From NCBI GenBank assembly GCA_965202585.1, contig OZ241832.1, positions 62,806,001 to 62,870,000 on the forward strand: a stretch of DNA of 64,000 bases. The letters are read 5' to 3'. Below the pieces are notes generated by a model. The model ran no database searches. It was not told where the DNA came from and was given only the letters and a program-made list of their open reading frames with translations. Made by a program: the position numbers and the translations under genes. This stretch comes from Thalia democratica (lineage: Eukaryota). Within the stretch, counting starts at the first letter, position 1; each line of letters begins with the position of its first letter. Of this stretch, positions 38,995 to 41,759 are shown in pieces.

Positions 38995-40390
38995 ATTAAG
39001 TGAATCGAGAATATTGTATACTAACATCAGCTAACAAATTAACAAAACATTCATTAAATGAACATTTGGTTAGTAATGCATTAAAAAACTTCAATGAAAA
39101 GCTACAAAATCAAAATGTAGTATTGTTTTATCAACTAACCTCAAAATTCAACCTGTCAGATAGTAAAATCACAAGTTTTAGATATATAGAACGTTTTTTT
39201 AGTATGATAGTTGAAACAGAAAGCTTTCTAAGGTTAGATTTTTGTACTGTCTCTAAAATACTTGGAAGTTATAGCCTACAAATCGATTCAGAAGTTGAAG
39301 TTCATAATGCTGCAAATAAATGGTTGAATCACAACTTTGAAGAAAATTGCAAGTTTTCAAAGCAGTTATCATTAAAAGTTCGTCTTAGTCTTTTGTCAGA
39401 ACATTATATAAAACATCTCATAAATTTATTTTCGTGTTTTTCTAAGAATAACGATTGTCTTGAAGTGTTGAAATACAGAAACTGTTTTTATCAGAATAGT
39501 TCTATTATTTATAATAAAAGTACACACTGTAACGAATACATGTTCAATATTCTTATTTCTGTAGGTTTTTGTCAGAGAGAACACAAACCTATTAAACAAG
39601 TAAAACAATTTTTGGAGATACTTTAGAAGAACTAAAGGACTCTCCTTTAATGTTAAAAAATCGGTGTTTTTTTAAAGCAGTTTATTTTAAAGGAGAAGGG
39701 TATGTTTTTGGTGGTATATGCACTGAAATATATCCTATTAGGTCAATTAAAAAATATTCACCTGTTAGTAAAACTTGGAATTATGTTTCTAATATGCCTG
39801 ATGAACGTCAATAGTTTTGTGCTTGTGCATTTATGGATACAATTTATCTTTTTGGTGGTCAAAGTTATGACTCTGGTTATTTTAAATCTTGTCTTCAGTT
39901 TGATCCCAAAACATTGAATTGGATAGAAATTGTGAAAATGAACGGACCGAGATCACATGCAGCTTGTTCAATATATGAAGAATATATTGTTGTTTCAGGT
40001 GGACGTTATTATAACAGAGATTCGAACTAAGTAGAATCATATGACGTTTTTGCTGATACTTGGACACCAATGCCAAATATGAATGAAAGAAGAAGTGATC
40101 ATAAATTAGTTTGTGTTAAAAGCAAAATTTTTGCAATATTTGGAGCAAATTTAAACACATATTGTGAAGTTTTTGATAAAACTAGCAATATGTTTGTCAC
40201 ACTTGTGTCACCTAAATTTTGTTTATCTGGCGTTGAAACTATTTTAGTTCGGTGTAAAATAATGGTTTTTCAAGTCAACGCACAAGATGTATTATGTTAT
40301 GACGTTGATAAAAATGAATGGTCAGATAAATCTTGTGAAGCTACAGAAAATATTGGTTATTTTTCATTAGTTAAAGTGCCTTGTTATTGA
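38995..40390 (+). pseudogene. Kelch-like paralogue 3, disabled exon 2
   Basis: Acceptor TTTCAG mutated to TTTCGG (38993-38994); TAA 38997-38999; ATG changed to GTG; frameshift near 39600-39626; nonsense TAG 39812-39814 and TAA 40028-40030. The ORF pieces 39000, 39833 and 40070 align to copy 2. Confidence 0.92.
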
Positions 40391-40857
40391 TATGACTAGC
40401 ATAAACTGAATGTATATTCGCAGTAATTTATAAAATGTTTGTAATTACTTACACTTAGGTATTCAACTAACGTTATATAAAAAATTCAGAAGTAAGATTC
40501 TTTATTTAAATTATAAAAAATTAATATATTTATTAGTTTCTATATGGCTATTAAGTTTTAATTTTGCCATTTAATTCTAAACTAAAGATAGTTTAAAAAA
40601 GCTAGAGATGATTTTCTCAAGATTAAAACCAATAAGGCTCTATTGAAATCTAAGTAATGCACTTTTTACGTTTTACTTGACATACAACGTTTTAATAACA
40701 GTTTAAAAAAAAATTTTATCAGTAAATTTTTATATGATTGTTATTGTTTAACATTTTGATTATAGACACAAACAGACGTATTTAGTAAGAAAAGTTTTGT
40801 AAACTTAAAGTTATAATAAACAATGAATTTTACCGCAAGATCAACAACAACAGCATC

Positions 40858-40918
40858 CGAGACAATCCTACGACCAGTTTCGTCCTTATTAGGACTCATT
40901 AGGTAGAAATAGTCGCGA
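40858..40918 (-). ncRNA. Type I hammerhead ribozyme, unit 1, core mutated (CUAAUGA, G5A)
   Basis: Minus strand: uuucuac CUAAUGA GUCCU AAUA AGGAC GAA AC UG GUC guagga. Stem I is fully paired (6 bp); putative cleavage site lies between 40872 and 40871. Confidence 0.85.
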
Positions 40919-41184
40919 GAAACCGCTATTGTGATCCTAGACAAGCGGGCTTAAGTACGAAGTACTGAAGCGACCGTTTGTGGGCAAAGTTGAAAAAAAT
41001 GACACAGCTAAATCATTCACAGCCCAGCGTCTCAGACATTGTCAGCTTGTTGTGAGATTATAGTCCGCGCTCGTTTGATCAGTTTTAGCCAGTATTTATT
41101 TCGGCCATCATCAACGAAGTTAAGATGTTTTATGCAATCGATAATAAACAATGAACTTTACCGCAAGATCAACAACAACAGCAT

Positions 41185-41245
41185 CCGAGACAATCCAACG
41201 ACCAGTTTCGTCCTTATTAGGACTCATCAGGCAGGAATAGTCGCG
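41185..41245 (-). ncRNA. Type I hammerhead ribozyme, unit 2, intact catalytic core
   Basis: Minus strand: gcgacuauuccugc CUGAUGA GUCCU AAUA AGGAC GAA AC UG GUC guuggauugucucgg. All conserved core nucleotides present, 5-bp stem II with G-C closing pair, minimal self-complementary stem III; site between 41200 and 41199. Confidence 0.9.
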
Positions 41246-41759
41246 AGAAACCGCTATTGTGATCCTAGACAAGCGGGCTTAAGTACGAAGTACTGAAGCG
41301 ACCGTTTGTGGGCAAAGTTGAAAAAATGACACAGCTAAATCATTCACAGCCCAACGTCTCAGACATTGTCAGCTTGTTGTGAGATTATAGTCCGCGCTCG
41401 TTTGATCAGTTTTACCCAGTATTTATTTCGGCCATCATCAACGAAGTTGAGATGTTTTATGCAATCGATAATAAACAATGAACTTTACCGTAAGATCAAC
41501 AACAACAGCAATTGCTCATTACATTGTCTTCTGACATTATCAAAGTTTATAGTATTAAATAGGGACTCTAATTTTAATTATCTACATTCTAATTTTTCTG
41601 ATCTGACCAACCCGAATTTATGAAATACTTTTTTAACTAAAAGGTTTAAAGTGAATTGCAACATTTAACAAAGGCGTCGCATTAGAACAATGCTCGACCT
41701 AAAATAAATGATAATCTAAGTAGACTTTTTTTTATATGTCGAAGCCTTATAAATAATGT

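What the first reader, a model, noticed from the sequence alone, without database searches (positions are those of the whole stretch)
40813..41510. Retrozyme-like tandem repeat encoding hammerhead ribozymes
Seen: a 43%-GC island of 2 x 327/328 bp plus 43 bp with no credible ORF. The minus strand of each unit reads [stem I]-CU(G/A)AUGA-GUCCU AAUA AGGAC-GAA-AC UG GUC-[stem I'], with a distal stem I extension (ucgcgac/gucucgg) beyond an internal loop. Established: this is the type I hammerhead topology. Non-LTR retrozymes of metazoans are tandem repeats of a few hundred nt with one type I hammerhead per unit; their multimeric transcripts self-cleave to monomers that circularise, and they are thought to be mobilised by Penelope-like RT. 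Inference: a young, possibly undescribed retrozyme family inserted ~420 nt downstream of, and antisense to, the gene 3 pseudogene.
Basis: partly seen in the sequence, partly recalled or inferred. Interest (0 to 1): 0.88.

Follow-up and report, generated by a model that had tools for sequence, protein, structure and literature searches.

The report
Decayed hammerhead retrozyme copy
This is one older, partly broken copy of a very abundant small non-coding mobile repeat that carries a self-cutting hammerhead RNA; the repeat belongs to a class described in animals in 2020, so it is real but ordinary.

Summary
Window 40813-41510 is a 2.13-unit tandem of a 327/328-bp non-coding repeat (41% GC in 24-27% GC flanks). 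Each unit carries a type I hammerhead on the minus strand.

The family is a typical animal non-LTR retrozyme:
- It has at least 1,561 exact copies of the ribozyme core in this 802-Mb genome.
- Young arrays have 99.6-100% identical units.
- 3' ends are fixed, 5' ends vary, and 14 of 15 loci show 8-14-nt target-site duplications.
- Many insertions are head-to-head composites with a ~54-nt tail on one arm. These are Penelope-type marks, and the genome's own Penelope-like elements show them too.

This particular copy is not young within the family. It is about 5% from the typical unit, with no sibling and no clear target duplication. One ribozyme carries a G5-to-A change in the catalytic core. The other has a stem I mismatch. 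Both have a weakened palindromic loop III, so release of a 328-nt circle from this locus is unlikely.

RNA-library contigs from three studies carry the family but not this locus, and contigs cannot show circles. No Penelope element with the same hammerhead was found.

The scan had already found and followed up this family on other DNA of this genome (s1-291866, s1-274414) with the same reading. Verdict: new member of a known kind, low to moderate interest.

The parts
40813..41510 (-). Whole insertion: 2.13 tandem units of the 327/328-nt retrozyme repeat. Counting the monomer (M) from the ribozyme cut site, the 5' end is at M17 (41510) and the 3' end at M59 (40813).
   Evidence: TRF; blastn mapping of the monomer (L001); an independent run's contig crosses 40700-40842 with no differences (table 8).
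41177..41248 (-). Hammerhead A. The core CUGAUGA (41230-41224) is intact. Stem II hairpin lies at 41223-41210, GAA at 41209-41207 and ACUGGU at 41206-41201. The predicted cut is after C 41200. Position 41197 carries A1.3-to-U, which gives a U.U mismatch in stem I.
   Evidence: Rfam HH9, 31.3 bits; comparison with the family-typical unit; the majority letter at 41197 and 41204 differs in DNA contigs (table 3).
40849..40920 (-). Hammerhead B. The core reads CUAAUGA (40902-40896), with G5-to-A at 40900. Two stem I changes keep the pairing. The predicted cut site is after C 40872.
   Evidence: Rfam HH9, 33.4 bits; G5-to-A occurs as 22 scattered singletons genome-wide against 1,561 intact cores.
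40872..41199 (-). The 328-nt monomer between the two predicted cut sites. This is the unit that would form the circular RNA.
   Evidence: MFE is -90.7 kcal/mol, z = -2.96, against -103.5 kcal/mol, z = -5.37 for the family-typical unit.
41511..41541 (-). 31 nt of unassigned sequence between the array's 5' end and a weak candidate target-site duplicate (AACTTT, also found directly after the 3' end at 40812-40807).
   Evidence: no alignment to the monomer on either strand. The 6-mer has a chance probability of about 0.08 by my estimate. One search found no TSD at the boundaries.

Best explanation
The stretch is a single, 5'-truncated insertion of a non-autonomous, non-LTR retrozyme.

How the family most likely works (the retrozyme model):
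1. Arrays are transcribed as multimers.
2. The type I hammerheads cut them. Helix III is only an A-U pair capped by the palindromic loop CCGG, so two neighbouring ribozymes must pair to form a double hammerhead before cutting.
3. The 327-nt monomers are circularised by a host RNA ligase.
4. A Penelope-like reverse transcriptase/endonuclease copies circular or multimeric RNA into nicked target DNA. Copying starts at a fixed template position 59 nt downstream of the cut site, which yields tandem arrays with variable 5' ends.

What is shown: repeat anatomy, hammerhead motif, copy number, fixed 3' ends, target-site duplications, inverted arms and tail, presence of intact Penelope-like genes, and family sequence in RNA libraries.

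What is inferred: self-cleavage, circularisation, and the identity of the mobilising enzyme.

This copy has since decayed. In a double hammerhead, core A (intact) would pair with substrate strand B and could cut after 40872. Core B (G5-to-A) could not cut after 41200. The locus can therefore at best be cut once and probably no longer releases a circle.
For: Anatomy and ribozyme:
- Motif and sub-threshold but significant Rfam hits here; the family-typical unit scores higher, 38.4 bits.
- The family-typical ribozyme has all core nucleotides, a 5-bp stem I followed by an internal loop and a distal stem, a 5-bp stem II, and ACCGGU at helix III. This is the 'canonical metazoan type I' architecture that needs dimers (PMC4209133; PMC7229834).

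Family size and age:
- 1,561 exact 31-mers of the core, with none in the reversed control.
- 2,624 first-look candidates for the array.
- Intra-array identity is 99.6-100% in 12 of the 15 arrays with two or more full units.

Insertion marks:
- 3' ends fall at M57-60 or M110-117, while 5' ends lie anywhere in the unit.
- 45 DNA contigs of an independent run leave the repeat at M59 (table 7).
- TSDs of 8-14 nt occur in 14 of 15 loci, against 20 of 210 (7 nt or longer) in mismatched controls.
- Eight head-to-head composites each carry the ~54-nt tail on one arm only. These are the marks listed for Penelope-like elements (PMC8557442).
- The genome's own RT plus GIY-YIG elements show the same head-to-head pairs, with a ~68-nt tail on one arm.

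RNA:
- The monomer RNA is unusually structured (z = -5.4).
- Family contigs lie in RNA libraries of three studies, one crossing the cut site.

Decay of this copy: (helix III duplex -3.2 against -8.3 kcal/mol).
Against: - No Rfam family reaches its gathering score.
- No cleavage or circle was observed. The RNA data are assembled contigs, many of which run into other loci's flanks, so they may be read-through transcripts or DNA carry-over.
- None of 18 Penelope-like loci sampled shares sequence or any hammerhead with the repeat, so the mobilising element is not identified.
- This copy lacks a clear target-site duplication and has no sibling copy.
Confidence: 0.85

Rival explanations
1. It is ordinary satellite DNA that happens to carry a hammerhead (as newt satellite 2 was first read), spread and resized by unequal crossing-over and segmental duplication rather than by retrotransposition.
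For: The arrangement is tandem, head to tail, with a roughly 330-bp unit. Some arrays hold about a dozen units (L026-L030).
Against: The arrays are short and scattered over all large contigs. Each is bounded by its own 8-14-nt duplication, with fixed 3' ends and variable 5' ends, and units within an array are identical. DNA-level satellite dynamics do not give these features.
Confidence: 0.05
2. It is the leftover terminal repeat (pLTR) of a 5'-truncated autonomous Penelope-like element, not a separate non-autonomous family.
For: Penelope-like elements carry hammerheads in their pLTRs and insert as partial tandems with inverted copies and tails (PMC4209133; PMC8557442). Xenopus retrozymes are sister to pLTRs (10.64898/2026.07.22.740005).
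Against: The 327-nt unit repeats up to about a dozen times with no ORF attached. 18 resident Penelope-like loci have no similarity to it and no hammerhead. tblastn with two resident RT proteins finds only stray fragments near the arrays.
Confidence: 0.07
3. It is a DNA copy of an autonomously replicating viroid-like or delta-like circular RNA (a 'retroviroid'), not a genome-born retroelement.
For: The RNA is small, highly structured, carries a hammerhead, and is found in RNA libraries.
Against: The ribozyme is present in one polarity only. There are thousands of germline copies with retrotransposon insertion marks. RNA contigs run into genomic flanks.
Confidence: 0.02

Closest known systems
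Metazoan non-LTR retrozymes (Cervera and de la Pena 2020, PMC7229834)
   Same: Tandem repeats of 150-450 bp with one type I hammerhead per unit, no ORF or LTR/PBS/PPT, GC below 50%, TSDs longer than 4 bp, a highly self-paired monomer RNA, and co-occurrence with Penelope-like elements.
   Different: Circular RNA was not shown here. This locus has a core-mutated ribozyme. The species is not among those named in the parts of the papers I read, and I could not identify it.
Newt / axolotl satellite 2 hammerhead (HHR_Amex1 type; PMC7229834, section read)
   Same: A unit of about 330 bp. Helix III is reduced to one base pair capped by a palindromic tetraloop, so the ribozyme is expected to act as a dimer in multimeric transcripts.
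   Different: The unit sequence and host are different: a marine planktonic animal, judging by the runs that hold it. The loop is CCGG. Copy number is in the low thousands, not about 60,000.
Penelope-like elements and their pLTR hammerheads (PMC4209133; PMC8557442)
   Same: Insertion architecture: 5' truncation, partial tandems, an inverted 5'-truncated copy, an extension (tail) at one end only, and TSDs.
   Different: There is no RT/EN ORF. The hammerhead is the canonical type with a 5-bp stem II, not the minimal PLE type with a 7-8-bp stem II. The resident PLE family sampled has no detectable hammerhead.

Membership tests
Hammerhead ribozyme, type I | Invariant core C3 U4 G5 A6 N7 G8 A9 ... 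G12 A13 A14, A15.1-U16.1, H17 | tested here: met
   Hammerhead A (41235-41195) and the family-typical unit have every position. Hammerhead B fails at G5 (A at 40900).
Hammerhead ribozyme, type I | Three helices around the core, with helix I open and helices II and III closed | tested here: met
   The Rfam HH9 alignment spans the full model with stems I and II paired. Helix III is only A-U (C-G) with a palindromic loop, as in many metazoan type I motifs (PMC4209133).
Hammerhead ribozyme, type I | Score at or above a curated Rfam gathering threshold | tested here: not met
   31.3-33.4 bits here and 38.4 bits for the family-typical unit, against 52 bits. E-values are still 1e-5 to 5e-8 locally.
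Hammerhead ribozyme, type I | Site-specific self-cleavage | not testable with these tools
   Needs in vitro transcription of monomer and dimer constructs.
Metazoan non-LTR retrozyme | Short tandem repeat (150-450 bp) with one type I hammerhead per unit, non-coding, no LTR | tested here: met
Metazoan non-LTR retrozyme | Dispersed copies flanked by target-site duplications longer than 4 bp | tested here: met
   Family: 14 of 15 loci, 8-14 nt. This copy: none at the boundaries, only a weak 6-mer 31 nt away.
Metazoan non-LTR retrozyme | Expressed as unit-length linear and circular RNA | tested here: inconclusive
   Family-type contigs lie in RNA libraries of three studies. None comes from this locus, and contigs cannot show ends or circles.
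Metazoan non-LTR retrozyme | Co-occurrence with autonomous Penelope-like elements | tested here: met
   69 GIY-YIG matches. [quoted passage not shown]
Penelope-type insertion | Variable 5' truncation, partial tandems, adjacent inverted 5'-truncated copy, tail at one end only | tested here: met
   Family: with the same pattern in resident PLEs. This copy shows only tandem units and 5' truncation.
Penelope-like element pLTR | Sequence continuity with an RT/EN-coding element | tested here: not met
   No similarity to 18 PLE loci. No RT next to the arrays beyond stray fragments.

The most novel reading that the evidence does not exclude
The retrozyme family is mobilised in trans by a resident endonuclease-positive Penelope-like family that itself has no hammerhead and shares no extended sequence with it. 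Under this reading:
- Recognition would rest on a short 3'-terminal motif (CATTGTTTATTAT in the repeat, CATTTTTATTTAT in the element) or on RNA shape.
- Reverse transcription would start at a fixed internal site, 59 nt past the ribozyme cut, on a circular or multimeric template.
- The ~54-nt tail would be added only when an inverted arm is also made.

This would give a clean natural system for dissecting Penelope-type target-primed reverse transcription on circular RNA.
Probability: 0.2. Interest if true: 0.55.

Novelty: new member of a known kind. Interest (0 to 1): 0.3.

Why it matters
The family adds one more animal genome in which thousands of recent hammerhead retrozyme insertions carry clear Penelope-type scars. 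That supports the proposal, still inferred rather than demonstrated, that Penelope-like enzymes mobilise animal retrozymes. The young arrays elsewhere in the genome, not this locus, would be good material for showing circular RNA and for mapping where reverse transcription starts. The copy in this window is a decaying relic. Its main use is to show how such copies die: a core G5-to-A change, a stem I mismatch and loss of the palindromic loop.

Tried and rejected
- **Rfam at gathering thresholds on the whole window:** no hit.
- **Search for the autonomous partner.** The hammerhead pair that note s1-317344 placed at a Penelope tail (L031 about 7940 and 8275) is not recognised by either method and is unrelated to this family.
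- **Sibling copies of this locus.** A 22-mer with two of its diagnostic letters hits only two other places, and those are not siblings.
- **Remnant of an inverted arm or tail beside 41510:** no alignment.
- **A 76%-identical relative (L032 5866-6153)** was examined for covariation. Its ribozyme has a G8-to-A change and its stems are unchanged, so it is uninformative.
- **Bacterial promoter/terminator scan:** no better than shuffles, and not relevant to an animal genome.
- **Species identity:** could not be established with these tools.

Full report
**1. Observation**

Tandem Repeats Finder reports one array at 40813-41510, with period 327, 2.1 copies and 97% matches. Read on the minus strand it consists of three parts:
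- a 5'-truncated unit of 311 nt;
- a full unit of 328 nt;
- 59 nt of a third unit.

The two long units are 97.4% identical. GC is 41.4% against 24-27% in the flanks and 24.3% for the window. The ORFs inside the repeat (85, 85 and 67 aa) match no Pfam family. On the + strand, BACK and Kelch ORF pieces end at 40390, about 420 nt before the array.

**2. The ribozyme**

The minus strand of each unit reads stem I, CUGAUGA or CUAAUGA, GUCCU-AAUA-AGGAC, GAA, ACUGGU, C, stem I'.

- Rfam gives no hit at curated thresholds.
- In E-value mode Hammerhead_HH9 aligns over its full length at 33.4 and 31.3 bits, E = 2e-6 and 1e-5.
- A whole-genome search with the same model gives E of about 4e-4 and 2e-3 for such scores.
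- The core pattern occurs twice in the window against 0.02 in shuffles.
- No ribozyme is found on the + strand.

The score falls short of 52 bits mainly because helix III is nearly absent.

**3. The family**

The genome (801.8 Mb, 1,833 contigs) holds a large family.
- The array query gave 2,624 first-look candidates, of which 35 were scored, yielding 122 matches at 84-100% identity, most of them 92-97%.
- The 31-nt core of the ribozyme occurs 1,561 times exactly, and 2,308 times if stem II may vary. The reversed control gives none.
- In 18 non-overlapping loci I mapped the monomer (M), counted from the predicted cut site.
- 12 of the 15 arrays with two or more full units are 99.6-100% identical internally, and the most central natural unit averages 98.75% to all others. 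The family has therefore amplified very recently.

The family-typical unit scores 38.4 bits with HH9. It has every invariant core nucleotide, a 5-bp stem I, a 5-bp stem II, and ACCGGU at helix III, which is one A-U pair capped by the palindromic loop CCGG. Cervera and de la Pena describe exactly this as the usual metazoan type I architecture. It cleaves poorly alone and well as a double hammerhead in tandem transcripts (PMC4209133; PMC7229834).

The 327-nt RNA folds far better than shuffles: -103.5 kcal/mol, z = -5.4, 0 of 100 shuffles as good. A long helix extends stem I and closes the molecule.

**4. Insertion marks**

- **3' ends.** They fall in two narrow classes, M57-60 and M110-117, whereas 5' ends lie anywhere in the unit. 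Divergent subfamily copies (83-86% identical) also end at M59. 45 DNA contigs of an independent run leave the repeat at that point (table 7).
- **Target-site duplications.** 14 of 15 loci have an 8-14-nt direct repeat at the two outer junctions. Only 20 of 210 mismatched flank pairs reach 7 nt, and none exceeds 8.
- **Head-to-head composites.** Nine loci are composites bounded by a single duplication, so each is one event. In the eight with canonical ends, one arm stops at M59 and the other, always the longer, at M110-117. That is a tail of about 54 nt at one end only.
- **Single arrays.** All eight end at M57-59.

Craig et al. list just these features for Penelope-like elements: strong 5' truncation, partial tandems, an adjacent inverted 5'-truncated copy, and an extension present at only one end (PMC8557442).

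**5. Resident Penelope-like elements**

The genome's own Penelope-like elements behave the same way.
- PF01541 (GIY-YIG) finds 69 matches, many in head-to-head pairs, with open frames up to 918 aa.
- One 857-aa ORF has a C-terminal GIY-YIG domain.
- Its centre aligns with an RVT_1-positive ORF across the YxDD region, E = 1e-10.
- In seven copies the shared sequence stops about 457-466 nt after the stop codon.
- Three copies, including one arm of each of two head-to-head pairs, carry a further ~68-nt tail. The outer flanks of the pairs repeat each other.

However, none of 18 such loci shares sequence with the repeat or holds any hammerhead. This was tested by blastn, by Rfam and by a stem-checked descriptor that recovers 7 of 7 positives. 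The mobilising element is therefore inferred from architecture, not identified.

**6. This copy**

Against the family-typical unit, both window units share 8 differences, and the array carries about 10 further private ones. Most of the differences are transitions.
- No closer relative exists among the scored hits; the best is 97% over 698 nt.
- A diagnostic 22-mer finds no sibling.
- It is the one locus of 15 without a boundary duplication. A 6-mer, AACTTT, abuts the 3' end and recurs 31 nt beyond the 5' end. The chance probability is about 0.08 by my estimate, and the 31 nt between match nothing in the unit.

Ribozyme A (41177-41248) keeps its core but has A1.3-to-U at 41197, giving a U.U mismatch in stem I. 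Ribozyme B (40849-40920) has G5-to-A at 40900. Both have ACUGGU in place of ACCGGU, which lowers the computed dimer helix from -8.3 to -3.2 kcal/mol. The DNA contigs of an independent run show the majority letters at 40900, 41197 and 41204 (table 3).

Genome-wide, the G5-to-A core occurs 22 times, always as a lone unit, against 1,561 intact cores. This fits post-insertion decay rather than a propagating variant.

Established knowledge of the double hammerhead is that the enzyme strand comes from one copy and the substrate strand from the other (Forster et al. 1988, as cited in PMC4209133). From this I infer:
- Core A with substrate B, whose stem I is CCUGC/GUAGG as in the family-typical unit, could cut after 40872.
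- Core B cannot cut after 41200.

This agrees with the other first-stage note on this stretch (s1-301227). One cut does not release a monomer, so a circle from this locus is unlikely. The monomer's fold has also weakened, to -90.7 kcal/mol, z = -3.0.

**7. RNA**

31-mer indexing finds the family-typical unit at shares of 0.31-0.56 in eight runs filed as RNA-Seq, from five studies of marine metatranscriptomes, plankton and fish gut; one of these runs is only guessed to be RNA. The window's own version is held at only 0.05-0.18. The family is also held at high share by runs labelled as four organisms.

I laid three of the RNA runs and one organism run on 40700-41650 at 90% likeness or better.
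- The RNA libraries gave 14 contigs on the repeat. None reached 99% or more, and all carried family-majority letters at the window's private sites. None touched the unique flanks.
- Several contigs leave the repeat at M59 or at other loci's 5' junctions, so they include read-through or DNA-derived sequence.
- One 214-nt contig crosses the cut site uncut.
- Contigs cannot show ends, strand or circles.

So the family is present in RNA libraries, this locus is not shown to be transcribed, and circular RNA remains untested.

**8. Comparison and verdict**

The stretch meets the sequence-level definition of metazoan non-LTR retrozymes (PMC7229834). A 2026 preprint argues that such retrozymes derive from Penelope pLTRs (10.64898/2026.07.22.740005). 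Its ribozyme works like the newt/axolotl dimeric type.

Rival readings are disfavoured by the insertion marks, the absence of any attached ORF, and the single-polarity ribozyme. They are plain satellite DNA, a truncated Penelope pLTR, and a DNA copy of a replicating viroid-like RNA.

The scan had already reached the same reading for this family on other DNA of this genome (s1-291866, s1-274414). I re-derived it independently from this locus. I added that this copy is an old, crippled one, and that the sampled resident Penelope family shows the same tail asymmetry but has no hammerhead.

Verdict: a real feature, a new member of a known kind, of low to moderate interest.

Noticed in passing
L045:4873-7626 (-), L046:2420-4990 (+), L047, L048, L049 (G000 C8:46.44 Mb, C9:31.61 Mb, C1:2.66 Mb, C5:59.77 Mb, C2:73.1 Mb): A young endonuclease-positive Penelope-like family with open frames of 779-918 aa, 91-100% identical 3' regions and head-to-head pairs. 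A ~68-nt tail sits on one arm only. No hammerhead is detectable by Rfam or a minimal-hammerhead descriptor, which is unusual for canonical C-terminal-EN Penelope elements.
   Followed up: partly
L003, L005, L007, L009, L011, L017, L018, L026-L030 (retrozyme composites): In 8 of 8 head-to-head retrozyme insertions with canonical ends, the ~54-nt tail (end at M110-117) is on the longer arm. 8 of 8 single arrays end at M57-59 with no tail. So the tail appears only when an inverted arm is also present.
   Followed up: partly
window 41511-41541: 31 nt between the array's 5' end and a weak candidate target duplicate match nothing in the repeat on either strand. They may be filler from the 5' junction, or simply flank.
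   Followed up: partly
window 39000-40390 (+): BACK (E = 1e-16) and Kelch (E = 3e-9) ORF pieces lie in different frames. This is a KLHL-like gene that either has short introns or is broken; which was not decided.
   Followed up: no
It is not recognised as a hammerhead by Rfam (E up to 1) or by a stem-checked descriptor, and it is unrelated to this family.
   Followed up: partly
L032:5866-6153 (-); L054, L055: Older relatives of the repeat (76-86% identical) exist. L054 and L055 end at the same M59 position. The L032 copy has a G8-to-A core change.
   Followed up: partly
runs X10-X13, X16, X17: Near-identical 31-mers of the family-typical unit are held at shares of 0.53-0.94 by runs labelled as four different organisms. 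These may be close relatives, one species under several labels, or prey and contaminant DNA.
   Followed up: no
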